Positions 1 through 44,729 of a stretch of 49,472 nucleotides of DNA are shown one piece after another; the first letter of the stretch is position 1; every line of letters starts with the position of its first letter. This DNA is from Paraphysomonas bandaiensis (Eukaryota > Protista > Chrysophyceae). The notes under the pieces are model-generated. The model was not told where the DNA came from. It saw only the letters and a program-made list of their open reading frames with translations, and searched no databases. The translations under genes and the position numbers were made by a program. The DNA is taken from NCBI GenBank assembly GCA_965644295.1, contig CBFFRP010000393.1, positions 1-49,472 on the forward strand, written 5' to 3'.

Positions 1-2411
1 GACTTGTTGTGCAATGACGATATTCTATTCACGGCGTCTATTACTATTTGCGTGGTCACCATCTTCACCCAGTTGGTCCTACTCACATATTTATTTGTTT
101 TAAGGTTTAAAAATATCCAACTCCCGTTTGCGTTGCCGGATGGGTACAGCGCGATACATGGTTCTGTTCTGTCCTGCTCCGCGTTATTGCTCTTGACCTT
201 CGGGTCATAGCATTCTACGTAGTCCCCGAAAGCCAGTGACAGTTCCTTTTTATAATTGGGTTTCCGACCAGTCAATGCCACTCGCGGTGCTACAGTTGTG
301 CCATTGGTGGATGGCCTCCTCAAGTTCATGCGGCTGTTGGCGTATCTCACCAGGTCTCTGACGTTGGCATCTGGTAGGTTCCATGGTAGCCCTGAATGTA
401 CACTGCGTATTGTCTCTTTGAGTCGCCTAATCTTCGCGTCGATCTTGTCCAGGTGATCTCCAGCCCCTGCCACGTCAATCTCCATCCCTGTGATTTTGCC
501 TCTCAGGGCCTTGAATCCCGGCTGAGGGTCCAGGTAGGTAACTGTCGGTATGTACCCGTAGCTTCTTAACAGGTTTACTTGTTCCTGTAGGGCCAATCCC
601 AACTGATCCGTTGTTTCGTTTTCGAGTGAAGTAACGATGGTTAGTCCCAATGGTTCCGCTAGTGTGAGCATGAACGATTGCTGTCTCACACTGAAGATGT
701 CTGTGTACAGCCTTTGCTCCTTCTGCTGTTCTGCCTTCAGTTCCGGATCCGCGTATTGCCGGCTGACTTTCTTATTCGTCTGCTTGCCTCTCACCGCTTC
801 GAACGGTCTCCCATATATGTCAAAAGCTCTTCTGATATCACTCGGGGTAAGTCGCACCCCTGTAACGTTTCCGTCGCTCACTAGCTGCACAGCATCTCTC
901 TCCGAGTCGAAGCCCGAGTTTCGGATCAGGTCTCGTGCTTCTCGTGCTCTCGCGACTTCTACTTTCGAATATTGGGCTTCGCGCTCCGCTACAGTCGTTA
1001 CGTTGACTTTGGCCGTTGCCCAGTCGCGCATGTCGGCCACATACATCTTGTTCTTTCGATAGAAAGTCAAATCACTGTCAGGTAAGTGCACAGTGAAAGA
1101 CTCTCCCTGCCTATATGTCACTTCATATATGTCTTCTACGTCCGCCTGGCATAGTACGCTTGCCCTTAGCTCATCCGCTGTCTTACAGGTGAAGAATTGA
1201 TCCAGCTCGCCTACATTCGGTAGTTCCAGTGCGTGTCCCGATAATCCCGCCACGGTGCATCCTCTGGACGCCGGTCTTACATTGTTCAGTAGTCTTGGGT
1301 GTACTACCGAGACATCCGCCTGATTGTCGAGTAATACTTCGTACCATTGGAATGGCTCGCTTCCTGACGTGAAGGCGTTCAACATTGTTGTCGTGCAGTG
1401 CTTGTTTTCTGATTCTTGACTGCTGTCTGGACATTCGTTCATTCTGTGGCCTGGCTCACCGCAGCCCCAACATATGAGCTGCCTTTTTTTCTGACCACGT
1501 TTACTGTTGTGCGATTTCGTGTCGTTCCCTTGTTGCTGCTCTGGTGTATCATCGCTATCTGCTGATTTCTTGCCTTTGTCAGACTTCGATTTGCTCACGA
1601 ATGCAGATCCGCCGCCTGCTCTCGTTGCTCTCTTCGGCGTTAGATATTTTGATGCTTTAGTATATATTTCATTTACGTGCGTAGGTGCTGCTTGCGTTCC
1701 CATTGTTAGATCGTTGAGATAGCTAGTTTTGAAATCGCCATATCTCATGTCGTCCAGCCCTTCGAAGAAATCCATCGCGATGTCTTCTTCATTCATTTCC
1801 GCGTTGTTCATGTCTTTGTAGGCTTCTAATAGATGATCAAACCTCTCCTTATAAGTAACTATACTCTCATATGCTCCCTGTTTAGCGTCTTTGTACCTTT
1901 TCCTCGCTTCTGCTCGTACCACTGTACTTACGCTGGAGTTAGTGGATACTTTGTGGGTTTGTTTGATAGCCAGCCATAGTAGTAGAGGATCCTTAGTCCT
2001 GTTCATGAGCTCGTATTCATCTAATAGCTTGACTGCATCCATTGATTCGTGGCTCAGATGGTCTACCATGAATGAGTAGAATGCCGATCTATCGTTCCGC
2101 ATCTTGTCTATTAATCTCCCTCTGGTCTTGGTCTTGTCCTTCATCAGGTCGAGGTTAACTCCATAGGGGTCGTCTTCCAAATCAAAATCCTCTGGGTTTA
2201 TCGCATCGGGCTCATAATATTTGTCCAGCTCTACTAGGCGTGCAAGATCACCGTACTTTTGCATGCCCACCACTACAAGCCTCTGTTTGAATGTGGCGAA
2301 GTTCGAGTTGGCACCGTATCTTAAAGTCGGTACATGTTCTGGTCTATCGGTGCTCGGTTTCTTGCCGAATCTTGCAAATCTTGTTGGCTTGTCGTTCGTT
2401 GTCTTCTTCAT
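1..2411 (-). CDS. Copia gag-pol polyprotein (partial, open past the window edge; absent from the ORF track)
   Basis: Hand translation from ATG 2411 (MKKTTNDKPTRFARFG...). Zinc knuckle CWGCGEPGHRMNEC (~1430-1472), aspartic protease EVLLDNQADVSVV (~1300-1340), integrase core YTDIF...YLDPQ...HLDKIDAKIRRLKETIR...LPW...TGRKP...FGDYV. ATG, knuckle and integrase checked as same frame. Confidence 0.9.
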   Translation of the reverse strand, partial: MKKTTNDKPTRFARFGKKPSTDRPEHVPTLRYGANSNFATFKQRLVVVGMQKYGDLARLVELDKYYEPDAINPEDFDLEDDPYGVNLDLMKDKTKTRGRLIDKMRNDRSAFYSFMVDHLSHESMDAVKLLDEYELMNRTKDPLLLWLAIKQTHKVSTNSSVSTVVRAEARKRYKDAKQGAYESIVTYKERFDHLLEAYKDMNNAEMNEEDIAMDFFEGLDDMRYGDFKTSYLNDLTMGTQAAPTHVNEIYTKASKYLTPKRATRAGGGSAFVSKSKSDKGKKSADSDDTPEQQQGNDTKSHNSKRGQKKRQLICWGCGEPGHRMNECPDSSQESENKHCTTTMLNAFTSGSEPFQWYEVLLDNQADVSVVHPRLLNNVRPASRGCTVAGLSGHALELPNVGELDQFFTCKTADELRASVLCQADVEDIYEVTYRQGESFTVHLPDSDLTFYRKNKMYVADMRDWATAKVNVTTVAEREAQYSKVEVARAREARDLIRNSGFDSERDAVQLVSDGNVTGVRLTPSDIRRAFDIYGRPFEAVRGKQTNKKVSRQYADPELKAEQQKEQRLYTDIFSVRQQSFMLTLAEPLGLTIVTSLENETTDQLGLALQEQVNLLRSYGYIPTVTYLDPQPGFKALRGKITGMEIDVAGAGDHLDKIDAKIRRLKETIRSVHSGLPWNLPDANVRDLVRYANSRMNLRRPSTNGTTVAPRVALTGRKPNYKKELSLAFGDYVECYDPKVKSNNAEQDRTEPCIALYPSGNANGSWIFLNLKTNKYVSRTNWVKMVTTQIVIDAVNRISSLHNK

Positions 2412-18194: not shown

Positions 18195-19457
18195 CTACTG
18201 AGCCTTCTTGCTCTCTTTTATTTGACTCTCGGAAGTTTCAGCATTAGGTCCGTCAATGTCGTCGTCATCATCATCAGATCGCTCATCTTTCTCAATGCCT
18301 GTGGTGAGAAGACGATAAATCATCTTCGAAATGAGATAAAACCAGAAAACATGTAGTAATTGAAGGGCCATCAGTAAACCGAAGTAAATCCAAAAGCCCG
18401 TCCAATTCGAACCCATAGACCCCTCTACAACCACATAAGAGGAATAAAAAACCCAATAAGGGTATATCACAAGTCGAAGAACGAAGAATGATATGGCAAA
18501 TATTGCGAATAGAACATCACATAAGTGACTCCAGTACTCGCGGCCTTTCACTTTAGAGACATAGTTGACGACCTTCGCTGACTCCAGGAATACATCAGAG
18601 GGATCGTGCAGTATAAGGACGGTGGTCCCTATGCGAGTGAAGTTGCACAAATAAGAAAGAACTATCAGAAATATAGTAACAATATGATGAATGATCATTT
18701 CAAGGCTGTCGGATCGAGATACATCAGTCCAAAGCAGCTGGTGGAAGTATGCACCAAGTTCCACGAGGTAATAGTACTTTACCATTGGGTACACAGGCTG
18801 CATTGGCCATCCTGTCCAATGGTCCTCTGTCCGTAAAACCCAAGGTACAGGGGTTGGAACAAACAATGTGTAATAGCCCATTATGCAGAATGCAGTGTAG
18901 AATATAAATCGCCACGAGGCTTCGATAAATTTGACCATCTTCTTATTCTGTACAAGAGAGCGCCGACGGGACCATATCTCATCATTTACCTCTTCAATAG
19001 ACATTCCTGTCTGCTTAGATATACTCTCAATTTCTTGTTTCTATAAATTGTGACGTTACATGCACGGAACAAGGAAAGTGCACACAAAGAGAGACTTACA
19101 GAAAGTCGAGTTTTTGAACTCTTTACTCTCGCAGCTATATCTTTATGAACCTTGATATCAACCGCGTCTAATTTCAAGGCATATATCGCCAAAGGCTGCG
19201 CATGTATAAGATAGCTACGCAATAAGCAACACACAGCTTACCTTGAATAGTATTTGCTGCAGTACTAGTCGACACAAACTAAGTGCCAGGCAGTAAAATA
19301 AAGACGGGTATAGTTGTGACAATTTCGTGAAATGGCCTTCTGCAGCCATAGCATCTATATGAGGAAGATCTAGAGTAATATACTCTGGACTAGATATATA
19401 TTGAATATAGTTTGAAGGGTGTTCAAAGTATGACACAATGGCATTTATAGTATCCAT
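18195..19457 (-). CDS. LAG1: Ceramide synthase (LAG1/CerS, TLC domain), 3 exons
   Basis: Exons 19457-19242, 19195-19100, 19040-18195 with GT-AG introns. KFIEASWR, Lag1 motif RSDSLEMIIHHIVT...LHDPSDVFLE, DERSDDDD acidic tail, C-terminal KKAQ ER-retrieval signal. Confidence 0.93.
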
Positions 19458-29008: not shown

Positions 29009-30704
29009 CTAAAGCATGAGGAGTGTTGGGTTACTAAGATAGTACTGAAATGCTTGCAAAAATTGTGAAGCAGTAGCTTCGTCAACAACTCTTCTGTCAG
29101 AGGACATTTGGACAGTCATTGTTGTAACCACGCGCGGCTCACCACCGTGCTCAACAGGTGGGAGTACACGTTGAATACCGCCTCCAACAGCCAAGATGCA
29201 TGCTTGAGGGGGGTTGATGACAGCTGTAAATGATGATATCCCAAACATTCCTGCGCGTTAAAAACAGTGTAATTTATGCAGGAGAAATATGTTGAGCTAC
29301 GCACCAAGGTTTGATATAGTAAAAGTGCCGCCTTGGTACTCCTTAGGTTGTAGCTTTCCGTCACGAGCGCGTGTAGCGAGGTCCTTCACTGTACTGTTGA
29401 TGGCAGATAGACCCAATTGATCAGCCCCACCAAGAATAGGAGTTATCAGTCCAGTGGGTGTAGCCACTGCGACTGATATGTCGACAGATTGGTTCAGCTC
29501 AGCAGAGCCTATAGAACAGAAGTGGACGTCAGGTGAGAAAAATCAATAATATGGGTAAAGTAGTACCTGTCGAAGAAGACCACCGACCGTTACACTCGGG
29601 AACGTCACGTAAAGCCATCGCAGCAGACTTAATGACTAGGTCGTTCACTGATACCGCGACTCCGAAGTCATTCTTTAGAGTTTTTCTCAGCTTCATCAAG
29701 TTGTCAATTTCACATTCAGCCGCACAATAGAGATGAGGAACTGTGGCTTTGGATTCGGCTAGTCGCTTCGCAATTACCTTGCGCATGTTGGAGTTGGGAA
29801 GGTCCGTGTATGAACCATTTGGTGAAGCGGTATTTGGTGTTACGCTGCCACTATCTGTACATTCGACGGGGTTCTTGTCAACTACGGAAGTATTATCATG
29901 AGCAGTTTCTTTAGCAGGTGACGACGCGGGCTTGGCGTTTCCATCCTGAATGGCTCGAAGTACGTCCCCCTTGGTAATAATACGCCCTCCTTTTACTGAC
30001 CCGCGAACACTACTAGCGTCAATGCGTCGGGATTGAACAATATGTCGTGCAGCAGGGGAAAATATGCCGGTTTGTGCAGGTGACTCGGAGGTAGAGGTCA
30101 ACGAAGTGGGGGCTAAAATGCTGGTATTAAACAAACGCAACATTCATAGGTGCAGAACTCACCTGACGCAAGAGAAGCGTCAGAAGTGGATATATCTGCC
30201 GAGCTCCCTTTGGTAGCTGTAGACGGAATCACTGATTCTTCTGGTAGAGTCAAATATTCTTTGTACTCTGCCTCATCGTTAACCATCAATGCTATGGGTG
30301 AACCACACTGAATCTCTTGGCCTGCAGTAATAGGCTTACACAGTCACCACACTTCGCTATACGTACCACCGGCTTCAACCAAAATTTTAGCTAGTACACC
30401 TTCATCCTGTACCTGCAAGGGACCATAAAAAGTTATAGATTTGATAGAAGACATGATACAGCCTATTCACCTCAAACCCAACAGACGCTTTGTCAGTTTC
30501 AACCTCGCATAGAACATCACCTGGTGCAAATGTATCACCTGGTTGCTTATTCCATGCAGATATCGTGCCATGCGTCATTGTAGGGCTTAGTGACGGCATC
30601 GGAATAGTTGTCACTTCTATCGAGGAACAGTTTCTTAGAAAAACACTGCCATATGTACTTCTCGAGCAACGGGAAATAAATCCAACGCACTTTCGTGTCA
30701 GCAT
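29009..30704 (-). CDS. PDHX: Pyruvate dehydrogenase complex E3-binding protein (protein X), E2-like, mitochondrial, multi-exon
   Basis: Transit peptide, one lipoyl domain (MPSLSPTM...EVETDKA), subunit-binding domain (SPAARHI...[10 protein letters not shown]), core domain. The DHRxxDG catalytic motif reads [10 protein letters not shown], lacking His as in E3BP. Confidence 0.8.
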
Positions 30705-30936
30705 TGCCGTATTTACCGTCTTAAATCACTATCAGTCAGAGGTTACTCAATCTAAATTATCTGCCTTATAAACAGATATCTACGCGTTGCAATGTATGAT
30801 ATATATACCGTAGACAGTGAAACTAAAGAACATGAATTTTGAATAGAGCTGAGTAGTTATTACCACTCCTCTTATTAAGTGTTATGGTGTGTACAGATAA
30901 CTGCATGATGATTCGTCCCACACCAGACATACTCGT

Positions 30937-31080
30937 ATGGGCAGTCAGCATCTTAGTTTTCGGAAATAAATTGAAGCAATAATACTCGATATTACTGCCA
31001 CACAAATACGTCAGGAATACAGATAATTGTTGTCTCAATACTAGAGGCATCTTGGAACAAAAATACACAAAGGATGCTGT
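30937..31080. mobile_element. ~145-bp MITE-like repeat, copy 3 (reverse orientation)
   Basis: GGCAGTCAGCATCTTA...ATAATTGTTGTCTCAATA...GAGGCATC is the reverse complement of copies 1 and 2. Confidence 0.75.
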
Positions 31081-31400
31081 GCTACGTACAGTTTACTGTA
31101 GATATACGATATATACTGCTGTATACAGACCAGCAGTTTATCATGAAACTGAAATTTTAGTAATCCACTCAAGATACCAACCGCATCTTTAAATATGCTG
31201 TTGTGACGGTTCAAGATCCAATATCTTTGATGACAACCTCACATCCATCATACATCCAGCAAAAGATTCGTACTTTTATTGTTGCACTTCATACTAACTT
31301 CATTACACTTCACAACGTCTTTTTATAGCGATCTTCATAACTTTCTATCTCAACGTATCATATACCATACTAACATATTGGATTATATATACTACGAAGA

Positions 31401-34400
31401 ATGGAGTTACCCCCTATAATGGAGTCTGGGACTCGTCCGATGATATCTACACAGTTGAAATCATCAAATAAGATCCTCGGTCCAAGCTATGAATGGTCCC
31501 CTATGCCAGGTGGATCCAAACAAGCCAGTACAAGAAGAGGGTTCAGTGTAAGGAATCGCAATCCATCAACCACTCATTTCACGGAGATTGCATCCCCTAC
31601 TCCAGCACCTGTACGAAGCCCTCAGAAATCATCACGTTTTGCTAACCAAAAGTCCGCTAGAATTGCAAGTCAGCAATCAGCTAAACTCGGTATTCAGCAA
31701 TCAGTGAGGCCCACAACAGAAGCTGATTCTCGTCGTTTGGGTAAAAGAGTATCAACACACTTTGGATTTTCTCAGAGACTTGCTAAGAGTAGCGCCAGCT
31801 TCCGTGAGTATACCTTTGTGGATACTCATACGAACACGACATTCAAATCCTCAAACTTGCTACTGGATCCAGTCAGATTCCGTAGAGTTGATGCCGATGG
31901 AACCCTAATGTCTACTGGTGGAGTGATGGTACGGGGAGAATCTGTGTCTCGACTAATGGCAGAAGACGAAACGTCTATCCGCGATCTACGTTATTACCGA
32001 GAAGTGGAAGTTCTGGGCTACGTATGGAGGTGGGTCCTTAAATATCTTATGCTCCTCACTAAGGACGAAGTAAACGCCCTACGCTTTACGAGGGGTTTGC
32101 AACTGTCATTGCCATTTTTGTATGGCTACGAGTCTTATTTGATGAGCGAAGTGATTGGTGCCTTCGAGAAGCGGGATAGTTATACCCTTGCGTACGCTCT
32201 CTCTTTAGCATTTAAGAACAGGAATGTCAGCCGTGTTTTGGTGCAGCAGATGATGCGATATGATATCTTCTGGCATCAGGATACGCAGTTTAAATGGAAC
32301 CGCCTCTTCGATGCTTTCGGAAACGTCCCAGTATTAGGAATGTTCACAAGTTTTCCGTCAACGGAGAATTTCCCAGATACTCGCAGTCACACAATCGCTG
32401 CTGTTTTCCGAGTTGTCTTGGGAAAAGGGTTTTGGTGGACACGCGTGCTTACCGGCCGACAAGAAATTGTAACAGATAATGAAAATGCCATCGCCCAGAA
32501 CCTTGCTGCCGAAAGTAATGGGTTTGAAACCGCAAACCGCAACCAACACGGTACTTTTCTCGGTCGAGAGAAAACAAATGCATTCCGACTACATCACCGT
32601 CTTCCTACTGATGAGAGCATTGTGCGAACTTTTATTGTGCAGCCGCTATCTACTATACTTAACAACGGTGTGGAACATGTGCTTCGCCAGGTGGCGCGGC
32701 ACTTTCATAATATGCTTTATCAGGATTTCGGAAACTTTGCACATCAACGCATGGAGCAGCTTAATCCATTTGAATTCCTCCGATTCCATATGCCTGTGAT
32801 CATGGTTGCGCTTACCACTCTTAGGGGTCTTACTACCTGGGACTCGCAGGTACTTGCCCCTTTCGTTTCGAGACTGCAACTCATTGGCAATATTGCTGAT
32901 GTCGAGGACGTTCGCGCCATCGTAAAGCAAATGCAAGAAGATATTGTGCTAAACTTGTGTGGAGGCATTGCCTCCCGGGTTGATATTATGCGCAGTCTTG
33001 TAAATGCCATTGATTCGTCCCTGACATATATTCAAAGTGAAGCAGCAGAAGTAAACGACATTGTCGAGTCTGTCGAAGCAGGATTGGACTTGGGCATGAA
33101 GCTGATCACAGGAGTGAAATGGACTGTTCCCAGTGATAGTGTTCTCTCTGCAGCTGTTGTAGCAGTATGTAGAAACAAACATACGGACGGTGTGTGCCCA
33201 CATGCGGTGAGGAGGGCTTTGAACTTGCTGGCCCCGAAGGATAAGCGAACGTTGATTCAGTTATGCTCTGCGGGGCACGAAGGTACTCATCCGGCAAAGC
33301 TTTTGGTGGCAAGGACTGTGACTTTGCTACAGCGGGAACTCCGTCGGGCAGTATGGGACGAAAAGCTTTTGGAGCTGTCTGTGGGTGAGGAGACAAAGAA
33401 GTATACTCCACTAAGTGTGTATTGGCTTGAGGATAAGGAGAGGAGCGCTGTTTACGTGTATGAAGGTAAAAAGCCAGGTAGCAATGAGCACAAATTTACG
33501 CACCGCGCCAGTGGCCATGTTCGCTGGGTCACACCTGGTGAAAATGTCACAGTGTACGAATATGTGGAATGTGCTGAGACCATTACACGAGCGCAACATG
33601 CTTTTATGACTATTGAACTCGAGAATGGCAAGAAATTCACTTACGATGCGTTTATGGAGTTTACCCAGTTAAGAGAGCCCCTGCGAAAACTGATAGTATT
33701 ATCTCAAATTCACTGTGAGGCATTGGATGACGCACGTCTGAATGTGCTACAGTCCTTTCAACGTGGGGCCCAAACGGAGATGAACGTTCATGCCATGGTT
33801 CCCGGTGAAACATATTACGTGTACAAGAATAAGCAGTACGAACCTTTCACCCCAACGAAGCCGTACTCAGCCGGCGATCCTGAATTTGAGGAGATCAAGG
33901 GGTTGCCCCTTTTTACTGTACCACCGCAATCCATGATCGTTATCGGTGGAGGCCCTACAGGACTTTTAACCACAATGCACTGTTTAGAGAACGTTCTACA
34001 AACCAGTGGCACTATGAGACTGTACGAGTCGCGCGATGCATTTGCTAAAGCTGGTGCTACTTTTGAGCGCTCCCAGATTGTACGACTTGACTCAAGATGG
34101 ATTGCCATGCTTCGCTATCACTTGGGCACCGTGTTTGAGGATGAGTTCATTCCTGCATCGGGAGAAACTGATCCGCATTACGGGAATACTCTCCCGAGCC
34201 AAGGTTTTATCGAAATTACCATTAAAGATATGGAGGCCATTATGAACTTGCAAGTTGCGAAGTTATTATCACGAGGTCTTCTCAGGCACGACACCAGCAG
34301 CGGAGCACAGTACGACCATAAGAAAAATAAGCTAATCAAACTGGGGAAAGCCCTTAAGAAAGATGACTTAATTCTGCGAAAATTTAATCCTGCTGGACAG

Positions 34401-37400
34401 CCCTGTGAAGAAGATTTTACGTGGAAGGTGGCGGAACTAAAGTATGCGAAGATTCTGGGGCCGTCGGACCTTCAGCTTGGCAACGAGTATGCATTGTTTA
34501 TTGCGAGTCGAAAGCAAGTTTTCCCTTTCTTTCTTGCTGGAATTAATCTGGCATCACAGGAGTATGTTTTCCAGTCACTTGATCCCAAGGTGGACGACGT
34601 ACTGTGTACAGCAACCACACTGCCTTTCGTGTACGCTAAAGGCACTAAGGCGCACTCGTTGTGTACGTCAATTGTCGTCGAATGCGTTATTCAGGACCAC
34701 GGTGGATACTCTCAGGAGGAACTTCCATTCTCGGAGGTGGAGAGCCAGCCTTTCGTAATTGATATTGGTCACTGTCACGTTGCGGAAGCCATTGGAAAGC
34801 CTCATGGCAGTCAGGTTCACTTTCAAGCTACTACTCTTGAACCATATGGGGTGTGCTGCTTGTCCGGGTTAAAGGTGTCTATGGGAATGCATAACTTTGG
34901 CACCCGTCGATGGAAAGTAGGAATTGTTGATGACATACGTAGTCACACTGACCAGAACACTCGTGTTATTGGTGATTTTACGAAGACTGTCAACGCCAGC
35001 ATTATTGCAGAGAATATGCACAAGTATTTGGTTGAAGACATGAACTGGAAGTTACACTTTGAGAAAGTAGTGGGAGATCTCGGATACAGCGATGATTTGG
35101 GATCCATTTGGACGCTGATGTGTGCTCATACTAAGGTGTATAGGGATATGGCTCCTTTCAAGCGATCCCATCTCCAAACACGCTTTTTCGAGACCGGTGA
35201 TAACTATTACCTAGGAATGGAGTTTACCCGTGAGTATGACAAATGGAAGCAAGCAACAGTTGCGTCATTGACTGCCAATATTTCTGCTTCTTCGGATGCA
35301 GAAAAGAAACAGCTGCGCATGTTGCGAGGAGCACTGACACATAATATTGATCGACTTTGGTATGACTCAGCCTTGGAAACTATCAGATCTGGTGATGTAT
35401 ACAACCCGGGAGGGCAGAGCAAAGTTCCAAGACTTTATGTAATTGATTCTCTGATCGACGTTGAGCTTCAAACCCTAGATATCGGTGAAAGCTTTAGGCT
35501 AGTGGCAGAACCCGCCAAACGATACGAAGTTCTGGTTAAAAAGCTAGGAAGTATCATTGTACGCGACGTTGAGGGCTTTATCTCCACGCTGAGTCCTTCA
35601 ACTAAGGTTAGATTAGGTGGTAACTTGACTAGGTCTCCGGACGGCACGGAAGAGTCTAAAGTTTCGATTGCAACTTTTCCCGTTGCGCACTATGTCAATT
35701 ACCGCACCATGAGGCTTAGCAACGCCAAGCGTGGCTACGTGTTCGCCTTTCTTGGTGATGAACAAGCCACTCCACACTTTATGAGGTACAGTGGACTTAC
35801 TGGTGCAGCCATCAATGCCATGCTGTTGGACAATTTTATTGGTGATGCTTTTGTTGGAATACCTTTCATAGACCGGTTCAGAAATTACTCTGCCGAAACG
35901 AATTGGTCAAACGGGGAAGTTGTACAGAGAGGAACTGGCGCCAATTATGGCGAGGATGGTTTCCTAGCTCCATCCTTTAAGTATGAGAAAGGGCTCGAGT
36001 ATCTATATTCAAAGGTCATGGAATACCGTGAATGTAAAGAGGATATGGAGTTTTTCCTCACTAGGGATTGGAGGATTAAGTTCGCAGCAGCCTTGGTTCC
36101 ACGTGGAATGGAATTTAACGAGGACTATATCAACGCTATGACTGGAAAAGTTAAAGATCTTATATTTGATCAGCTTGTTACTAACTCGAAGTCGGATATT
36201 GGCCAAGATGTTGCTGATATTGAAACTATATTACGTGATCGGTTGGAAGAAATGAAAGAGTGCGACGAAGGTGATACTGAAGATTACTGGGAGGAATTTG
36301 TTGAAGGCCTAAAGCTGGATAGCGACACCAAGAAAAAGTTGCAAGATACTCATGTGTTCATGGCCATGCATCTCGAAAATGCCCTGAATAATATTGTCAA
36401 AATGGCTGCCGATCAGTACGAAACTAACGAGCGCATATCATCACAATTGTATAACCAGCCGAAATCTGCTGATTCTATTATTGATGATTTTGCCGTAGAA
36501 GCGCAGACGTTCATTGTGAGCTTAAGTCAGATTGGAACATTATCTGCTATTGGTCTTGCTTTGCAATTCATCACCACAATTGGAAGTGCTGTGATATCGG
36601 TTATCGGTATTTGGTTTGCTATTGGTTCAATCACCAACGCTTCCAGGTATAAGAATCGTAACGAGTATTTCCGTGAGAAATTTTGTGATGAGCGGTTGAT
36701 TCATGTGATCAAGGCAATTTATTCTTGCATGACCACAGCTGATCGTGAGAGTATCCCTAAAGAAAAAAACCCTTTTGTCGCGATCTTGGAGCAGCAGAAA
36801 ACTACATTTGTGGAAAATGTCAAGTATTATGATTTTCCTAAACCAACTGACTTCTTGAGCGCATACAATGCACTTCTCCAGAGACTTCATGATCCCGAGG
36901 CAATCTCTGTGTTTTTGAAAGAATTGGCGTCCAAATTCATGGCCGATACCTATCACTCCAACATTTACTTGAAGCGCGACCTTGTGGAAATTTATGCCAC
37001 CGTAGATGAAATGCTTCATGTTGAATCGAGAAATGTGAAGCTTTCTTACCAGGTGTCTGTATCGGTGGTTGCGCTTTTTGAGCGACTATGGCTATTTGTG
37101 CCTCGGTTGGATTCATCTCTTCAGCGTGGATCTATATTCTTCGGTGCGTTTAAGAAAAGAGGTTTTAAGCACAGTCATGTCGCAGATCTATTCCACTACG
37201 TCTGGGCGCAAATATGGTGCCCTAAAACTAAAGAGGCTGGGTGCTGCATTCTTCCACGAACAGTAGAAGAGTCAAAAGCTGCGGCGTCTTCTGTGGTGAA
37301 GCCTGTTGCGGTTGAAACTTGGGAACTAACTTCGCAAATGAAGTCTCTCTCATCTGTGTTGCCTTCGTCGTCTCTGCATCGCGAGGTGTTGGATATGCAA

Positions 37401-38252
37401 AGCGTTTATTATGCAACCAAGGAGAGTTACGTCAGCAGCTTCATTATTCTGGCCGGTTGGCTTTCATTCATCACCAGCATTGTGTTTTCCGTTGGTAACA
37501 TCGGATTAGCTGCGAATTCGAATGCGTTGTGGGCATCTCGACTAGTCTTGGGTGGTTCGTTTTCGTTTGGTATTGTGACTCCCCTCAGTGCTGCGCTCGC
37601 ATTTTTCTACTTACTGAGAAAACTGCGACATATATTTTCTTGTGATTGGGCATTGGGTAAACGAATGTCTTCTACTCTTGACAAGGTTGCACACGATCGT
37701 CTGAGAAGTATTCGCAAGGTTGTTAAAACACAGGAGATTGTAAGCATTGTGCGTACTATCGCCATTGGTGCCGCTGCAGTCTCGCTTCCCTGGTCACTTG
37801 CCGCTGCAAGAGGGTTATATCCTAATCGCTCGATCCCTCTGTATGTTGCACTCGGAGCGGTTGCACTGCAGGGGGTTGCACTGATAATGATCTTTATGGT
37901 GGAGTACTGTATTCTTTTTAATTTGGATCCAAAGCTCGGCGAGTACATATGTGTTGCCTTTGATGATGAACTGAGGGAGATCAAGGATGACATGACTGTC
38001 CGCAAGAACAAGATTCTTACTGATCAAGTACAGGAACGTGCAACTTGGGAGTATGTGGCTCGTTTATTTTTGCACCGCTACCGTTTTGACACAATATTTG
38101 CTGCTGATCGATTTGGTTCGATTCTACAGTACATCCAGAGCGGTTTACAGCTCCGAGAGGATGTAAAGGTCCCCACTGATGACGACAGCAATGACGGTGA
38201 CGATGATGAGGATGATGAGGACGACGAGGACGATGAAGACGCATTTGAATAA
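31401..38252 (+). CDS. Giant uncharacterised membrane protein with a MICAL-like FAD-dependent monooxygenase domain
   Basis: 2283-aa intronless ORF. Rossmann IVIGGGPTG...LYESRD, RSQIVRL, ITIKDME, FLGDEQATPHFMRYSGLTGA, about 6 hydrophobic helices in the last 600 aa, acidic C-tail. Confidence 0.8.
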   Translation: MELPPIMESGTRPMISTQLKSSNKILGPSYEWSPMPGGSKQASTRRGFSVRNRNPSTTHFTEIASPTPAPVRSPQKSSRFANQKSARIASQQSAKLGIQQSVRPTTEADSRRLGKRVSTHFGFSQRLAKSSASFREYTFVDTHTNTTFKSSNLLLDPVRFRRVDADGTLMSTGGVMVRGESVSRLMAEDETSIRDLRYYREVEVLGYVWRWVLKYLMLLTKDEVNALRFTRGLQLSLPFLYGYESYLMSEVIGAFEKRDSYTLAYALSLAFKNRNVSRVLVQQMMRYDIFWHQDTQFKWNRLFDAFGNVPVLGMFTSFPSTENFPDTRSHTIAAVFRVVLGKGFWWTRVLTGRQEIVTDNENAIAQNLAAESNGFETANRNQHGTFLGREKTNAFRLHHRLPTDESIVRTFIVQPLSTILNNGVEHVLRQVARHFHNMLYQDFGNFAHQRMEQLNPFEFLRFHMPVIMVALTTLRGLTTWDSQVLAPFVSRLQLIGNIADVEDVRAIVKQMQEDIVLNLCGGIASRVDIMRSLVNAIDSSLTYIQSEAAEVNDIVESVEAGLDLGMKLITGVKWTVPSDSVLSAAVVAVCRNKHTDGVCPHAVRRALNLLAPKDKRTLIQLCSAGHEGTHPAKLLVARTVTLLQRELRRAVWDEKLLELSVGEETKKYTPLSVYWLEDKERSAVYVYEGKKPGSNEHKFTHRASGHVRWVTPGENVTVYEYVECAETITRAQHAFMTIELENGKKFTYDAFMEFTQLREPLRKLIVLSQIHCEALDDARLNVLQSFQRGAQTEMNVHAMVPGETYYVYKNKQYEPFTPTKPYSAGDPEFEEIKGLPLFTVPPQSMIVIGGGPTGLLTTMHCLENVLQTSGTMRLYESRDAFAKAGATFERSQIVRLDSRWIAMLRYHLGTVFEDEFIPASGETDPHYGNTLPSQGFIEITIKDMEAIMNLQVAKLLSRGLLRHDTSSGAQYDHKKNKLIKLGKALKKDDLILRKFNPAGQPCEEDFTWKVAELKYAKILGPSDLQLGNEYALFIASRKQVFPFFLAGINLASQEYVFQSLDPKVDDVLCTATTLPFVYAKGTKAHSLCTSIVVECVIQDHGGYSQEELPFSEVESQPFVIDIGHCHVAEAIGKPHGSQVHFQATTLEPYGVCCLSGLKVSMGMHNFGTRRWKVGIVDDIRSHTDQNTRVIGDFTKTVNASIIAENMHKYLVEDMNWKLHFEKVVGDLGYSDDLGSIWTLMCAHTKVYRDMAPFKRSHLQTRFFETGDNYYLGMEFTREYDKWKQATVASLTANISASSDAEKKQLRMLRGALTHNIDRLWYDSALETIRSGDVYNPGGQSKVPRLYVIDSLIDVELQTLDIGESFRLVAEPAKRYEVLVKKLGSIIVRDVEGFISTLSPSTKVRLGGNLTRSPDGTEESKVSIATFPVAHYVNYRTMRLSNAKRGYVFAFLGDEQATPHFMRYSGLTGAAINAMLLDNFIGDAFVGIPFIDRFRNYSAETNWSNGEVVQRGTGANYGEDGFLAPSFKYEKGLEYLYSKVMEYRECKEDMEFFLTRDWRIKFAAALVPRGMEFNEDYINAMTGKVKDLIFDQLVTNSKSDIGQDVADIETILRDRLEEMKECDEGDTEDYWEEFVEGLKLDSDTKKKLQDTHVFMAMHLENALNNIVKMAADQYETNERISSQLYNQPKSADSIIDDFAVEAQTFIVSLSQIGTLSAIGLALQFITTIGSAVISVIGIWFAIGSITNASRYKNRNEYFREKFCDERLIHVIKAIYSCMTTADRESIPKEKNPFVAILEQQKTTFVENVKYYDFPKPTDFLSAYNALLQRLHDPEAISVFLKELASKFMADTYHSNIYLKRDLVEIYATVDEMLHVESRNVKLSYQVSVSVVALFERLWLFVPRLDSSLQRGSIFFGAFKKRGFKHSHVADLFHYVWAQIWCPKTKEAGCCILPRTVEESKAAASSVVKPVAVETWELTSQMKSLSSVLPSSSLHREVLDMQSVYYATKESYVSSFIILAGWLSFITSIVFSVGNIGLAANSNALWASRLVLGGSFSFGIVTPLSAALAFFYLLRKLRHIFSCDWALGKRMSSTLDKVAHDRLRSIRKVVKTQEIVSIVRTIAIGAAAVSLPWSLAAARGLYPNRSIPLYVALGAVALQGVALIMIFMVEYCILFNLDPKLGEYICVAFDDELREIKDDMTVRKNKILTDQVQERATWEYVARLFLHRYRFDTIFAADRFGSILQYIQSGLQLREDVKVPTDDDSNDGDDDEDDEDDEDDEDAFE

Positions 38253-38837
38253 GTGGCATGGTTGAATTATGACAAGCAATACTTTTATGTTTTGAAACTC
38301 TTTGCCTTCGTTCACTGGCTTAAATGTATGAGTTTTCAATTTATCGATAACATGAAAGTAATTAATATTCGCGAATTGGTTCTTAAATTTTGATGTAGCG
38401 GGTCTCCAGCTTACAACATAGTTATAGTGTTGATCGTAACTGCATTATTTTAATATATAACGTACAACTAATTGACTATTGTTTATCTAGGTCGAATTTT
38501 TTTGTTGGTTAGTCACATTAGAGCATTGGATGGTACATGTGTAAACGAACCACTATCTTCTCTTTTCTCTTAATAGTATGAAACTTCTCTTCTTTATAGC
38601 AGGGCTAGGAAACAATATATTGAATTGCAATATATTGTAAAGTATATTGACTGGTCGACCGGCCAAAACTCCCATCAGTATTGTTTATGTTAAAGTAGCT
38701 CACAATATAGTATGATATATCATACGTACAACCTACAAGGCATACATTTACATTTTATTCCCATTTTTTCTAAAAATGTATATTTGACTAGCATTTAGTT
38801 ACAAGACGCTGTTATTAATACTTCGAAAGTATAGATA

Positions 38838-41002: not shown

Positions 41003-42188
41003 TTAACTATTCTCTCCCAATATATCCGTAGACATCACCTCAGCAGAGGTTGGTTTGTCTTGGATCACGGCCGCTATCCTGTCTACTGCTGATTTGACCA
41101 TGGAGCTTGGGGCACCGCCGGAGTGGTACAACACCAGACCACTGGCCGCAAGAGCAAAAGCCAAATAATATAGCCAATGCACGGCATTTCCAAATACTAA
41201 ATACGCTATAGCTACTGCGTACGCATCTGAGGTTAGGAGGGATAAATTGAACAATGCAGCATCGTTAGCCTTTAGAAAGACAGAAGTATTGCAGTACATG
41301 AGGAAAAGGCACACTACGAATCCTGCGGAGAATGAAACAGACTCGTAGCCCCAGTACACAGAAGTTATCTTTTTCAACTCGAAGGCTGCCATCTGAACAC
41401 CAGATATGAGCGCTCCATTTAACCCAAGCATTCCGAGAAATTCTATACGGTTATGACTCTTCACGAGAGTTTCCTGCAGAACGTTGGATGCAGCATATAG
41501 ACAAGCGCCAATCTAAAGAGAGTGATTGATGAGATGAGCATATATAATGTAAAATTAAACCCACCAGACATAGCACATCTCCTTTAAGAGGCTGGCTGGC
41601 AGCAGAGTCAGAATTTGACAGCGTATCTGAGTACACTACACAGCCCAACCCAAGAAGACATATGACCACACCACCCAGATGATAGCGATTATATGTTGCT
41701 CCTAAAAATACAACCGACAGTAACATCACGCAAGGTATTGTAAAGCAGTCTAGCAACATTATAGAAGTAACAGATGTGTAATTGTAAGCTGATATAATCA
41801 GAACATTGGCTTCCACGTCGAGAAGTGCAGCCACAAAATACACCCAAAACGGCCACTGCAATCTAATACCACAAGACCACCATTTCTCTACACACATATC
41901 AATCTCACGATTATATAACAACCTCACAATATGTAGTGATAGAAAGAAATAATTAAAGAAACTGAGCATCATCGGACAGTTTGCTTGTTTAGATGCTAAT
42001 AATGATGCAAAGAGTGCCGTTCCAGATATTAATAATGATATATATTGTCCATGTAGTAATGGTGTGATTCTTTGTATCCATTTCATATGACAGATTCCCT
42101 CTTTATCGATAGTAGCAGGAGGTCTATTAAGATTCTGTGTGTTGTCTTCATCAGATATTAACTCGTAGTTGTTCATGACAGCTGACAT
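41003..42188 (-). CDS. SLC35F: SLC35F-family (F1/F2-like) DMT transporter, 2 exons
   Basis: GQYISLLISGT, LLDVEANVLIISAYNYTSVTSIMLLDCFTIP, GDVLCL, NVLQE, EFLGMLGLNG, FNLSLLTSD. Intron ~41514-41563. Start uncertain (42209/42188/42176). Confidence 0.9.
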
Positions 42189-42367
42189 GGGAAGTTCATT
42201 CAAGAACATATTAAGAATATGAGATGCATATGATGTATATGTATAGATGAATAGATTGGGATTAGATGGATTGGTGTATGTATATGTATGCACCTTAATG
42301 GGGTTTATAGATGTACTGCTCTATCATAGTGTTGTACATACATACATACATGCATGCATAGTACATG

Positions 42368-42928: not shown

Positions 42929-44729
42929 ATGTCTGGTTGTTTTGCTGAACGCATCGAAATACTTCCTGGTAAGAATAAGATGATCATTACAACCTCATTA
43001 ATTAATGCTTGTTTATGAATAGGCCAATTATATTTTTGTTGCAAAGATGATAATAAGGCTCTGGAAACCTCACAGAAGTACATATACTTTTCAACTGATA
43101 ACACCCTGCAATACACTGCATTCTTCGCTGACTTTGGACCATTGAATATTGGACTTACGTATAACTTTTGTGAACAGCTTGACACACTACTGACTCAATC
43201 AAGTGTCGAGAGAAAACCAGTAATATACTACTCATCAACACACCCTCACAAACGGGCAAATGCAGCCGTATTGCTATGTGCCTACTTGGTATGTGGCTAC
43301 ATATAGAAAGAAAGATTGTGTTAACACCTTATGATGGTGCAGATTTTTGTAAAAGAATTAACAGTGGAGCAGGCATATGCCCCTTTTATTGGTACCATGT
43401 GCTTTATCCCTTCCTCACTCTAGATAACTCTTTTCTGCAGGAATCACACCGATGCTGACAACGTTTAGGGATGCTGCTTTCTGTATCAACACTTACCCGG
43501 TTACTGTACTTGACTGTACTCGCGCCTTTTATCGAGCTCATTGTCTGAAACATTTCGTATACTCAACGTTTGATGTTCACAAACATGACCATCTCGCTAA
43601 ACTAGAGAATGGAGATGTTTCGTGGATAATTCCTGGAAAGTTCGTCGCCTTTAGTGGTCCTACCAGCGCCCCCCGTGAACTTTCCCCTGGAGTCTTTGCA
43701 TTGTCTCCGGAAGGTTATGTTCCTCTATTCAAGAGTCTTGGTGTTACTTGTATTGTCCGGTTCAACAAGAAATGTTACGACAGGAATATATTCGTACGGG
43801 CTGGAATTCGTCATGTAGATCTCTACTACGAGGACGGAGGCAACCCTTCTGATTCTATTCTTCAGGTAGCGTTCCATAAACATGTGCATTTCATTTTATT
43901 GAATTCCCTACTGCAGGCGTTTCTTACCACGTGCGAAAAGGAGAAAGGTGCTATTGCAGTACACTGTAAAGCAGGTCTTGGACGAACTGGAACCAATATC
44001 GCAGCCTACATGATGAAGCACTATGGCTACAGTGCAAGAGAAAGCACAGCCTGGTGTCGGGTATGTCGCCCTGGTTCTGTGGTTGGCCCACAGCAACAGT
44101 ATTTGGAGACAATTCAAGAACGTATGTGGGAAGAGGGACGTATATACAGAAATGAAGCCCGCGGGACAAAGGGTGATAACGGAAGTGCACTACCCTCCAC
44201 TGGGAAGACATCCCAGACACATATTAGGAGAAAGTCTAGTGGAAGTGCGCGCTCATCTGCGGAGACCGTTGAGAGTTCTCTGACGGCCCGACTTCTACGA
44301 AATCATCAGCGGCAAGCGCATCGCACGAATGACGGCGAATCAGCTGTGCGAGCGACAGCATCAGGGCGGGCGCGATCAGAAGATTTCCTGAAGCGGCCAA
44401 ACACGTCAGGCGGGGCAAGTGGTGATATCAGTAACAGCAGAAATTCTGGCGGAGAACATGCCCGACAGAAATTAGTTGTGGAAGAGCGACCTAAGACCTC
44501 TTCTCGAGCTGCAAGTGGTAAGATATCCACGGAGTCCTCTTCACATCTGCCGTCAGCGAGTAACGGTAGTCGCGATAAGAAGTCTTCCACCACTGGAGGT
44601 CTATGGGCATCCAGAACGCATTCCCCCAGCGGAATCAAGGCCAACAGTACGAGCTTGAGTCGAAGGAATATTGTGCGTAAAAATAGTTCATCCGGTAGTG
44701 CTAAACGACCAGCAAATAAATATGTTTGA
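42929..44729 (+). CDS. CDC14: Dual-specificity phosphatase CDC14, multi-exon
   Basis: A-domain FFADFGPLN, KRANAAVL, FRDAA; ENGDVSWIIPGKF; catalytic VHCKAGLGRTG; RPGSVVGPQQ. Confidence 0.95.

What the first reader, a model, noticed from the sequence alone, without database searches (positions are those of the whole stretch)
31401..38252. Intronless 2283-aa membrane-anchored flavoenzyme with a split MICAL-like monooxygenase fold
Seen: GxGxxG (IVIGGGPTG, ~33945), acidic beta2 end (LYESRD), RSQIVRL, ITIKDME, a DG-like strand (HVAEAIGKPHGS, ~34780) and a GD motif (FLGDEQATPHFMRYSG, ~35754). Established: these parallel MICAL/PHBH-family motifs (RxNxLHL, ISIRQLQ, GDxxxxPFWPxGTG), where GxGxxG and GD lie roughly 300 aa apart. 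Here they are ~600 aa apart, implying large insertions. The domain is flanked by ~850 aa of unrecognised N-terminal sequence and ~6 TM helices in two groups plus an acidic tail. Inference: an undescribed redox enzyme fused to a membrane sensor/channel-like module. Absence of introns over 6.8 kb among intron-rich neighbours hints at retroposition or lateral origin.
Basis: partly seen in the sequence, partly recalled or inferred. Interest (0 to 1): 0.75.

Follow-up and report, generated by a model that had tools for sequence, protein, structure and literature searches.

The report
Giant membrane-anchored flavin monooxygenase of diatoms
This is a real, transcribed, intron-free gene of a marine diatom-like alga for a 2283-residue membrane protein whose centre is a flavin (FAD) monooxygenase of the p-hydroxybenzoate-hydroxylase/MICAL fold, swollen by large insertions and joined to a conserved 630-residue domain of no known fold; the family is conserved but undescribed.

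Summary
Transcript assemblies lie on it without a gap.

An AlphaFold model of aa 830-1560 (pLDDT 80.5) matches group A flavoprotein monooxygenases along its whole span (Z 15-19, 300-358 residues aligned). HspB, CmlS, UbiH, KMO, PHBH and MICAL are all near-tied. Foldseek puts MICAL first by a small margin. About 380 residues of the domain are therefore insertions. By sequence, only the first beta-alpha-beta is recognisable.

The N-terminal domain (aa 200-830) folds confidently (pLDDT 83) but matches nothing. Its profile finds only 241 proteins among 1.84 billion; the 150 listed all look like family members or fragments.

The C-terminus has 2+4 hydrophobic segments with tiny loops on the far side, so it is an anchor and not a sensor with an ectodomain.

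About 64 colinear homologues exist in diatoms and Bigelowiella, all unnamed.

The hints of retroposition or lateral origin, and the channel-like reading, are not supported. No closeness to MICAL above other group A enzymes is shown.

Verdict: a new architectural variant of a known enzyme kind, with unknown substrate. The scan had not noted it before.

The parts
31330..38381 (+). Unspliced mRNA (approximate ends)
   Evidence: a 7052-nt contig of run X3 (a run of organism A, guessed to be RNA) lies colinear from 31330 to the end of the laid stretch (36900), with 1 mismatch, no gaps and no joints. By its length it would end near 38381. Poly(A) and cDNA metatranscriptome contigs (X13, X17) would end at about 38375-38396. 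Depth is 0 at 31101-31300.
31401..38252 (+). Coding sequence, 2283 aa, single exon
   Evidence: This is the first ATG of the transcript contig; no ATG occurs in 31330-31400. Against a ~99% identical relative there are 28 synonymous and 8 non-synonymous differences.
31401..31997 (+). aa 1-199: Ser/Arg/Thr/Pro-rich, poorly conserved N-terminal region
   Evidence: Homology to family members begins at about aa 130-210. Composition. No hydrophobic signal-like segment.
31998..33890 (+). aa 200-830: conserved, family-specific, mostly helical domain of no known fold
   Evidence: Alignment A2 has 28 invariant columns. AF2 pLDDT 83.4, pTM 0.77. No Foldseek PDB match at E<=0.001. VIA best Z 6.8, on a 55-residue barrel only. 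Atlas TM<=0.22. No Pfam match. The profile finds only 241 proteins among 1.84 billion.
33384..33587 (+). aa 662-729: small SH3/Tudor-like beta-barrel inside the N-terminal domain (weak assignment)
   Evidence: Tudor, PWWP, KOW and BirA-C barrels at Z 5.7-6.8, 48-63 residues aligned, rmsd 1.6-3.5. This is within the range the tool calls common arrangements.
33915..36080 (+). aa ~839-1560: group A flavoprotein monooxygenase (PHBH/MICAL) fold with about 380 residues of insertions
   Evidence: AF2 pLDDT 80.5, pTM 0.71. VIA: 134 chains with Z>=8; top Z 15-19 with 300-358 residues aligned over model 10..690-731. Foldseek: 257 matches at E<=0.001, MICAL3/MICAL1 first at 5e-8. Language-model features point to FAD_binding_3 clusters at 0.93-0.97.
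33936..34037 (+). ADP-binding beta-alpha-beta: GxGxxG (aa 849-854) to the acidic end of beta2 (E876), followed by RDAF
   Evidence: Profile matches to AfoD 7lo1 (E 2.4e-4), HspB (0.029) and MICAL3 (0.041; shares E-x-R-D-A-F after beta2).
34278..34772 (+). aa ~960-1124: beta-rich inserted module, confidently modelled but poorly conserved in sequence
   Evidence: Model strands E133-E291 with pLDDT about 90. Low column conservation. GxGxxG to the DG-like Gly is 283 residues here. My recollection is that it is about 150 in PHBH; that figure is from memory, not tested. The borders are inferred.
34776..34811 (+). DG-like strand; G1132 and K1133 invariant, the Asp not conserved
   Evidence: A profile of this region finds nothing related in the PDB.
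35748..35831 (+). Second FAD fingerprint: strand, G1452-D1453, P1458, G1465..G1468, N1472, D1477, then a long helix
   Evidence: D1453, H1459, F1460, R1462 and S1464-T1467 are invariant. The model has strand 617-621 followed by helix 635-656. The structural alignments run through it. Not detectable by sequence profile.
36507..36644 (+). aa 1703-1748: 46-residue hydrophobic stretch, either a transmembrane hairpin or a monotopic hairpin
   Evidence: The turn carries no charge. A K/R-rich conserved juxtamembrane motif follows.
36645..37424 (+). aa 1749-2008: soluble region between the two hydrophobic groups, moderately conserved, unrecognised
37425..37931 (+). aa 2009-2177: four transmembrane helices (2009-2034, 2048-2072, 2112-2134, 2144-2177)
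   Evidence: The TM3-4 and TM5-6 loops are about 10-11 residues with few charges. The TM4-5 loop is 39 residues with a family mean of 7.9 K+R.
38013..38150 (+). aa 2205-2250: highly conserved C-terminal segment after the last helix
   Evidence: two invariant Phe and many positions at 80% conservation or more.
38175..38249 (+). aa 2259-2283: Asp/Glu tail
   Evidence: It lies outside the region conserved in the family.

Best explanation
The gene is an expressed, single-copy, single-exon nuclear gene of a marine diatom-like alga. It encodes a polytopic membrane protein of roughly 255 kDa (estimated from its length). The soluble parts all lie on one side of the membrane, most likely the cytosolic side.

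The core (aa ~839-1560) is a single-component FAD monooxygenase of group A (PHBH fold). FAD would be held by the GxGxxG beta-alpha-beta, by E876 at the end of beta2 and by the strand-GD-helix element at 1452-1477. NAD(P)H would reduce the flavin from the protein surface. Candidate contacts are R878 and R890, which sit where the review places MICAL R116/R121 and PHBH Q34/R42. The reduced flavin would react with O2 to form a C4a-hydroperoxide that oxygenates a substrate, or decays to H2O2.

About 380 extra residues (a beta-rich module and helical inserts) remodel the substrate side. A family-specific 630-residue helical domain precedes the enzyme. A 2+4 hydrophobic anchor holds it at a membrane.

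My lean is that it is a regulated oxygenase acting on a hydrophobic small molecule at that membrane, as KMO, squalene monooxygenase and fungal VecG do. The substrate class is not resolved.

Shown: the ORF, colinear gapless coverage by transcriptome and metatranscriptome contigs, conservation, the predicted fold and the hydropathy. Inferred: FAD binding, catalysis, topology and substrate.
For: ORF and motifs. Colinear transcript contigs with no joints, and identical pieces in poly(A) marine metatranscriptomes. Purifying selection, 28 synonymous against 8 non-synonymous differences. Sixty-four colinear homologues at 28-67% identity. Confident model of the core matching group A monooxygenases end to end at Z 15-19 and Foldseek E down to 5e-8. 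FAD_binding_3-type language-model neighbours. The first beta-alpha-beta matches AfoD, HspB and MICAL3 by profile. FAD-contact motifs are invariant. Hydrophobic segments are conserved in position, and the charge distribution fits N-in/C-in. The gene is single copy in the 62.5-Mb assembly. There is a precedent for a flavin monooxygenase core that needs a fused transmembrane region (VecG, PMC13386531).
Against: No Pfam family reaches threshold on the protein. The DG and GD regions are not recognisable by sequence profile against solved structures. The Asp of the DG fingerprint is not conserved, so coenzyme handling may differ or be lost. The fold rests on a predicted model, and I could not inspect coordinates or dock FAD. 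Topology rests on hydropathy and charge only. The C-terminal 720 residues were not folded. Nothing here bears on the substrate.
Confidence: 0.7

Rival explanations
1. It is a membrane-tethered functional analogue of MICAL. The flavoenzyme would oxidise a protein substrate (for example actin methionines) or emit H2O2 locally. The N-terminal domain and the conserved C-terminal segment would act as targeting or autoinhibitory modules.
For: MICAL3/MICAL1 are the first Foldseek matches (E 5e-8), and 344-346 residues align at Z 16.9. The family shares E-x-R-D-A-F after beta2 with MICAL3. Two lower-ranked language-model neighbour clusters carry the Rossman_Mical family (ranks 19 and 23). The giant multidomain layout with long conserved non-catalytic regions is more like a signalling enzyme than a metabolic one. 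A possible SH3/Tudor-like barrel is present. One Bigelowiella paralogue (P0056) has a WW domain on precomputed record.
Against: In the Foldseek-independent alignment MICAL ranks below or ties with many small-molecule enzymes: HspB 19.1, CmlS 18.7, UbiH 17.9. The MICAL3 profile match is E 0.041 and covers the dinucleotide-binding fold only. No CH, LIM or Rossman_Mical Pfam match was found.
Confidence: 0.2
2. The monooxygenase fold is a catalytically dead remnant. It may or may not still bind FAD, and it would serve as a structural or ligand-binding module in a large membrane scaffold.
For: The DG-fingerprint Asp is lost and the GDAAH-type His is absent. Sequence similarity to active enzymes is confined to the first 60-100 residues. 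Half of the domain is insertion.
Against: The residues that contact FAD in this fold (GxGxxG, E876, R890, D1453) and many residues on the strands of the substrate side are invariant over 28-67% identity. That is not expected once catalysis is lost. MICAL also departs from the PHBH consensus and is active (PMC3645671).
Confidence: 0.12
3. The C-terminal hydrophobic module is a channel or a sensor that the redox domain regulates.
For: Six hydrophobic segments in two conserved groups. A conserved juxtamembrane motif lies after the second segment, and the post-membrane C-terminal segment is highly conserved.
Against: Residues within the helices are poorly conserved, mostly 20-50%. The far-side loops are 8-11 residues with no domain to sense anything. 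No Pfam or PDB sequence match to any channel or transporter was found. This part was not folded, so the reading is not excluded.
Confidence: 0.05
4. The gene reached this genome by retroposition or lateral transfer, which would explain the lack of introns.
For: 6.85 kb without an intron. G+C is 43-47% in the gene against 37-42% in the flanks.
Against: The G+C rise is the usual difference between coding and non-coding sequence. Other ORFs of 500-800 aa in the window are also unbroken. Homologues are spread through diatoms with the same colinear architecture. The Nitzschia orthologue has a single ~80-nt intron. No poly(A) tract follows the gene. Of the homologues whose source gives a name, none is prokaryotic.
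Confidence: 0.05

Closest known systems
Group A flavoprotein monooxygenases (PHBH fold): HspB 7da9, MHPCO 3gmb, UbiH 7mwa, KMO 5x6r, PHBH 8weq, AfoD 7lo1
   Same: One Rossmann-type FAD domain with GxGxxG, an acidic end of beta2 and a strand-GD-helix element. No separate NAD(P)H domain. The predicted fold aligns over 300-330 residues at Z 16-19.
   Different: The domain is about 720 residues instead of 370-450. GxGxxG and GD are 603 residues apart. The DG Asp is not conserved. No Pfam FAD_binding_3 match. It is embedded in a 2283-residue membrane protein.
MICAL1/2/3 monooxygenase domain (2bry, 6ici, 9ewy)
   Same: Best Foldseek matches, with 344-346 residues aligned. E-x-R-D-A-F follows beta2. 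Both are giant multidomain proteins in which the enzyme is one module.
   Different: No CH, LIM or Rab-binding coiled-coil domains. MICAL is soluble with its enzyme at the N-terminus. Here the enzyme is central, carries about 300 more residues, and is followed by membrane segments. Structural similarity to MICAL is no higher than to bacterial small-molecule hydroxylases.
Membrane-bound flavin monooxygenases: KMO (C-terminal anchor, 6lkd), squalene monooxygenase, fungal VecG/AtnA-type large FMOs with a fused transmembrane region (PMC13386531)
   Same: A flavin monooxygenase core joined to hydrophobic segments in one polypeptide. For VecG both parts are needed for activity.
   Different: Those proteins have 450-805 residues and no N-terminal 830-residue extension. 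Homology of the membrane parts was not tested, because I held no sequences of them. VecG acts in a fungal secondary-metabolite cluster.
P0065-P0067: unnamed ~1300-residue proteins from metagenomes
   Same: They share the first ~100 residues of the flavoenzyme at 43% identity, including the family's R-x-Q-I-V-R-L-D motif (hhalign E 3e-24), and give a weak FAD_binding_3 match.
   Different: They have no counterpart of the N-terminal domain, and similarity stops after about 100 residues. They look like a sister family with another architecture.

Membership tests
Group A flavoprotein monooxygenases (PHBH fold) | N-terminal ADP-binding beta-alpha-beta with GxGxxG and an acidic residue ending beta2 | tested here: met
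   GGGPTG at aa 849-854 and E876, conserved in 90-100% of 37 homologues. Profile match to AfoD at E 2.4e-4.
Group A flavoprotein monooxygenases (PHBH fold) | Whole-domain PHBH fold (FAD domain plus substrate-side sheet plus C-terminal helices), without a second dinucleotide domain | tested here: met
   On a predicted model only: Z 15-19, 300-358 residues aligned across model 10..731; Foldseek probability 1.00 for more than 50 group A entries.
Group A flavoprotein monooxygenases (PHBH fold) | GD fingerprint (strand, Gly-Asp, Pro, Gly-rich turn, Asn/Asp helix) contacting the ribityl chain | tested here: met
   The pattern G1452-D1453..P1458..G1465..G1468..N1472..D1477 has an invariant Asp and lies on strand 617-621 followed by helix 635-656 of the model. 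No sequence-profile match, however.
Group A flavoprotein monooxygenases (PHBH fold) | DG fingerprint (Asp-Gly after a strand; FAD pyrophosphate and NAD(P)H contact) | tested here: not met
   At the candidate strand (aa 1126-1137) the Gly and the next Lys are invariant, but the preceding residue is Ile or variable, not Asp. No profile match.
Group A flavoprotein monooxygenases (PHBH fold) | Pfam FAD_binding_3 (PF01494) above the gathering score | tested here: not met
   No match for the protein or for any of 37 homologues. Only weak DAO, NAD_binding_9 and NAD_binding_8 hits on the first beta-alpha-beta.
Group A flavoprotein monooxygenases (PHBH fold) | Bound FAD, NAD(P)H-dependent flavin reduction, substrate oxygenation | not testable with these tools
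   Needs expression and spectroscopy or assay.
MICAL family | Monooxygenase domain closer to MICAL than to other group A enzymes (Pfam Rossman_Mical) | tested here: inconclusive
   First in Foldseek by less than one order of magnitude in E. Z 16.9 against 19.1 for HspB in VIA. MICAL3 profile match E 0.041. No PF25413 match.
MICAL family | Calponin-homology and LIM domains, plus a C-terminal coiled-coil (Rab-binding) region | tested here: not met
   No Pfam match anywhere in the 2283 residues at E<=1, nor in the homologues' flanks.
MICAL family | F-actin-stimulated NADPH oxidation and oxidation of actin Met44/Met47 | not testable with these tools
   Biochemical assay needed.
Flavin-dependent halogenases | WxWxIP motif | tested here: not met
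   No W-x-W-x-[IV]-P anywhere in the protein, although CmlS, CndH and Mpy16 are among the good fold matches. The catalytic Lys of these enzymes was not examined.
VecG-type large fungal FMO with fused transmembrane region | Sequence homology of the core and of the transmembrane region to VecG/AtnA | not tested
   I held no VecG sequence from a tool. Only the architecture is compared (PMC13386531).

The most novel reading that the evidence does not exclude
Diatoms and chlorarachniophytes would possess a membrane-tethered counterpart of MICAL. It would be a regulated flavoenzyme that writes oxidative marks on proteins, or releases H2O2, at one particular endomembrane. Control would come from a 630-residue domain of a new fold and from a conserved C-terminal segment. 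This would be a redox-signalling device with no described equivalent outside animals.
Probability: 0.18. Interest if true: 0.8.

Novelty: new variant of a known kind. Interest (0 to 1): 0.58.

Why it matters
Group A flavoprotein monooxygenases are among the best-studied flavoenzymes, and this family stretches the fold in three ways. It nearly doubles the domain by insertions. It drops one of the three classical fingerprints. It places the enzyme in the middle of a 2283-residue membrane protein, next to a confidently folding domain with no structural or sequence relative.

The family is conserved across diatoms, which are major marine primary producers, and in a chlorarachniophyte. It is under purifying selection and turns up in poly(A) ocean metatranscriptomes. 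Yet every database member seen here is 'hypothetical' and no Pfam family covers any part of it.

Finding its substrate would either add a membrane-bound oxygenation step to diatom lipid, isoprenoid or quinone metabolism, or reveal a MICAL-like redox signalling enzyme outside animals. The N-terminal domain is a candidate for a new fold family.

Tried and rejected
- Pfam on the whole protein, and on 36-37 homologues of each of the three regions, gave nothing above threshold.
- Sequence and profile searches of solved structures with the whole core, the N-domain, the C-region, the DG region and the GD region returned only dinucleotide-fold matches or chance hits.
- The language-model atlas gave no usable hit for the N-domain.
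- Foldseek PDB, VIA wide and the ESM-atlas shape search found no fold match for the N-domain.
- A profile of the N-domain against 1.84 billion representatives found no relative among the 150 proteins listed that carries a different architecture.
- Complex prediction of the core (with FAD riding along) against the most conserved N-domain stretch (aa 299-479) gave score 0.00, 'no answer'. The controls were not run. This is no evidence either way.
- The halogenase reading is rejected because there is no WxWxIP motif.
- Literature searches for a description of the family (MICAL with diatom; flavin monooxygenase with transmembrane and stramenopiles; MICAL phylogeny in protists) found none.
- A first full-length MAFFT run timed out and was repeated with a faster mode.

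Full report
**The observation.** The window holds one uninterrupted ORF at 31401-38252 on the + strand, 2283 codons from an ATG.
- IVIGGGPTG, aa 846-854. This contains the only GxGxxG in the protein.
- LYESRD, aa 874-879.
- RSQIVRL, aa 890-896.
- ITIKDME, aa 939-945.
- HVAEAIGKPHGS, aa 1126-1137.
- FLGDEQATPHFMRYSG, aa 1450-1465.

GxGxxG and GD are 603 residues apart. Hydropathy gives a 46-residue hydrophobic stretch at 1703-1748 and four helices at 2009-2034, 2048-2072, 2112-2134 and 2144-2177. A run of Asp/Glu ends the protein.

**Is it a real gene?** Yes.
- A 7052-nt contig from a 2015 run of the same organism lies on 31330-36900 with one mismatch, no gap and no joint. That run has 42,341 contigs and 24 Mb in all, which fits a transcriptome rather than the 62.5-Mb genome, although the tool marks 'RNA' as a guess.
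- Nothing lies on 31101-31300.
- By their lengths, this contig and contigs from two marine metatranscriptome studies (one poly(A), one cDNA) would end at about 38375-38396. That is 125-145 nt past the stop codon. This step is inferred, because only 6000 letters could be laid.
- There is no ATG between 31330 and 31401.
- A second organism about 99% identical differs at 36 listed places in the ORF. Of these, 28 are synonymous and 8 are not, which indicates clear purifying selection.
- The gene is single copy in the 62.5-Mb, 669-contig assembly.

**Relatives.** A word-indexed search with aa 830-1560 returned 64 proteins of 1300-2530 residues with 28-67% identity over that region. BLAST shows them colinear with the query from about aa 130-210 to about 2250. 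The sources that give names call them unnamed, hypothetical or 'expressed unknown' proteins. The named organisms are:
- the diatoms Nitzschia inconspicua, Seminavis robusta, Cylindrotheca closterium and Ditylum brightwellii, and a Bacillariaceae MAG;
- an Ectocarpus fasciculatus assembly (partial; possibly an epiphyte);
- Bigelowiella natans, which has at least two paralogues.

Other agents of this scan took this genome for a marine diatom. My hits agree, but I did not identify the species.

**The core is a group A flavoprotein monooxygenase.** Pfam finds nothing on the protein. In the homologues only weak DAO, NAD_binding_8 and NAD_binding_9 hits fall on the first beta-alpha-beta. Language-model features place aa 830-1560 next to FAD_binding_3 clusters at 0.93-0.97, including two with the Rossman_Mical family.

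An AlphaFold2 model built on 37 homologues has mean pLDDT 80.5 and pTM 0.71.
- Foldseek against the PDB gives 257 matches at E<=0.001. MICAL3 and MICAL1 come first (5e-8). Flavin halogenases, kynurenine 3-monooxygenase, PHBH, phenol hydroxylase and TetX follow.
- The Foldseek-independent aligner gives Z 19.1 for HspB, 18.7 for CmlS, 18.0 for MHPCO, 17.9 for UbiH and 16.9 for MICAL1/3. Each has 300-358 residues aligned, and the alignments run from model residue ~10 to ~690-731.

So the N- and C-terminal motifs belong to one PHBH-type fold, and roughly 380 of the 731 residues are extra. From the model's secondary structure and the conservation profile, the extras are:
- a beta-rich, confidently modelled but poorly conserved module at aa ~960-1124;
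- helical inserts at ~1195-1250 and ~1277-1330;
- beta-hairpins at ~1340-1420.

These borders are my inference. I had no coordinates and no residue-level superposition.

**Fingerprints.**
- GxGxxG, the acidic E876 and R890 are conserved in 90-100% of homologues.
- The GD element has the canonical layout of strand, G-D, P, Gly-rich turn and N-x4-D helix. D1453, H1459, F1460, R1462 and S1464-T1467 are invariant.
- The 'DG' fingerprint is not kept. G1132 and K1133 are invariant but the preceding residue is not Asp.
- Profiles of the DG and GD regions find nothing related among solved structures.
- A profile of the first 125 residues finds AfoD (2.4e-4), HspB (0.029) and MICAL3 (0.041). The MICAL3 alignment shares E-x-R-D-A-F after beta2.
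- The review names MICAL K115, R116 and R121 in that stretch as possible counterparts of the PHBH NADPH-contact residues. R878 and R890 would be their equivalents here (inference).
- No halogenase WxWxIP motif exists.

In sum, the fold is group A. No closeness to MICAL above other group A enzymes is shown.

**The N-terminal part.** Residues 1-199 are Ser/Arg/Thr/Pro-rich and not conserved. Residues 200-830 are strongly conserved, with 28 invariant columns, many of them Arg, Asn, Glu or Gly. They fold confidently (pLDDT 83.4, pTM 0.77) into a mostly helical domain with one small beta-barrel.
- Foldseek finds no PDB match at E<=0.001.
- The wide aligner's best is Z 6.8 for Tudor/PWWP/KOW-type barrels on aa 662-729 only. 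That is inside the range the tool calls common.
- The ESM-atlas shape search gives TM<=0.22.
- A profile of this domain against 1.84 billion representative proteins finds only 241 at E<=0.001. The 150 listed all look like full-length members or fragments of this family. The domain is therefore family-specific.
- Its most conserved stretch (aa ~310-400) is its least confidently modelled part. I read this as a possible interface, but the one docking test gave no answer.

**The C-terminal part.** It has no Pfam match and no match to solved structures. The hydrophobic segments are conserved in position across the family, but their residues are poorly conserved.
- The turn inside 1703-1748 and the TM3-4 and TM5-6 loops are 8-11 residues with few charges.
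- The stretch after 1748 and the 39-residue TM4-5 loop are K/R-rich, with family means of 5.2 and 7.9 K+R.
- With no signal peptide (my reading of the N-terminal sequence and), this fits N-in/C-in. Every soluble part would lie on the cytosolic side and nothing substantial on the other.

That is an anchor and not a receptor with an ectodomain. A pore cannot be excluded without a model. The last 45 residues before the acidic tail are among the best-conserved in the protein.

**Origin.** The lack of introns is real, but it is not evidence of retroposition or transfer.
- The Nitzschia orthologue is two ORFs separated by about 80 nt, and a divergent Cylindrotheca paralogue has about five exons.
- Other 500-800-residue ORFs in this window are also unbroken.
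- The neighbours are ordinary eukaryotic genes: a TLC-domain protein, 2-oxoacid dehydrogenase E2, SLC35F and a dual-specificity phosphatase.
- No poly(A) tract follows the gene.
- The higher G+C of the gene is the usual difference between coding and non-coding sequence.

**What it most likely does.** It is a membrane-anchored, cytosol-facing, FAD-dependent monooxygenase. NAD(P)H would reduce the flavin, O2 would give the flavin hydroperoxide, and a substrate bound in the much-remodelled substrate side would be oxygenated. Uncoupled turnover would give H2O2.

I lean to a hydrophobic small molecule at the membrane. The precedents are KMO, squalene monooxygenase and the fungal VecG, whose fused transmembrane region is required for activity (PMC13386531). 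The main rival is a MICAL-like protein oxidase or local H2O2 source, which the multidomain layout favours. A dead-enzyme scaffold is less likely given the invariance of the FAD-contact residues. None of these can be separated without biochemistry.

**Novelty.** I found no description of the family and no Pfam family for any part of it. The enzyme kind is known. What is new is the architecture, the doubled domain and the N-terminal domain of unknown fold.

Noticed in passing
window 30934-31077: A short stretch just upstream of the gene is matched in part by many separate contigs of the transcriptome and metatranscriptome runs. Each contig runs on into unrelated sequence (loose ends at 30934, 30979, 30987 and 31077). 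It looks like a dispersed repeat or mobile-element fragment.
   Followed up: no
window 41003-42293 (-): An SLC35F-type solute carrier is split into two overlapping ORFs: profile positions 9-176 in one and 188-299 in the other. This suggests one short intron or a frameshift.
   Followed up: no
window 29529-30143 (-): The ORF carries an E3-binding domain and only the first third of a 2-oxoacid dehydrogenase acyltransferase domain. It is an exon of a split E2 gene that diverges head-to-head from the big gene.
   Followed up: no
window 18195-19004 (-) and 43452-44729 (+): A complete TLC (TRAM/LAG1/CLN8) domain protein, E 1e-46, and a dual-specificity phosphatase. Both appear as single ORFs.
   Followed up: no
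P0065, P0066, P0067 (metagenome proteins, ~1300 aa): A sister family shares only the first ~100 residues of this flavoenzyme (43% identity, same R-x-Q-I-V-R-L-D motif; hhalign E 3e-24). It lacks the N-terminal domain.
   Followed up: partly
P0056/P0205 and P0058 (Bigelowiella natans): The chlorarachniophyte has at least two paralogues of the family. One of them (P0056) carries a WW domain (PF00397) on precomputed record. A WW match (E 1.5e-4) also came from one member of the N-domain alignment, but the tool did not say which.
   Followed up: partly
window 31405-36900, run X11 (organism B): A second cultured organism carries the gene at about 99% identity (55 differences in 5.5 kb). Of 36 listed differences, 28 are synonymous. 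The 8 replacements fall mostly in the N-terminal 830 residues, and one falls in an insertion of the core.
   Followed up: yes
window aa 1153 (nt ~34857): An invariant Cys in a strongly conserved strand (E-P-Y-G-V-C-C) of the substrate-side sheet of the flavoenzyme. It is a candidate active-site or redox residue, but its position relative to the flavin could not be checked.
   Followed up: no
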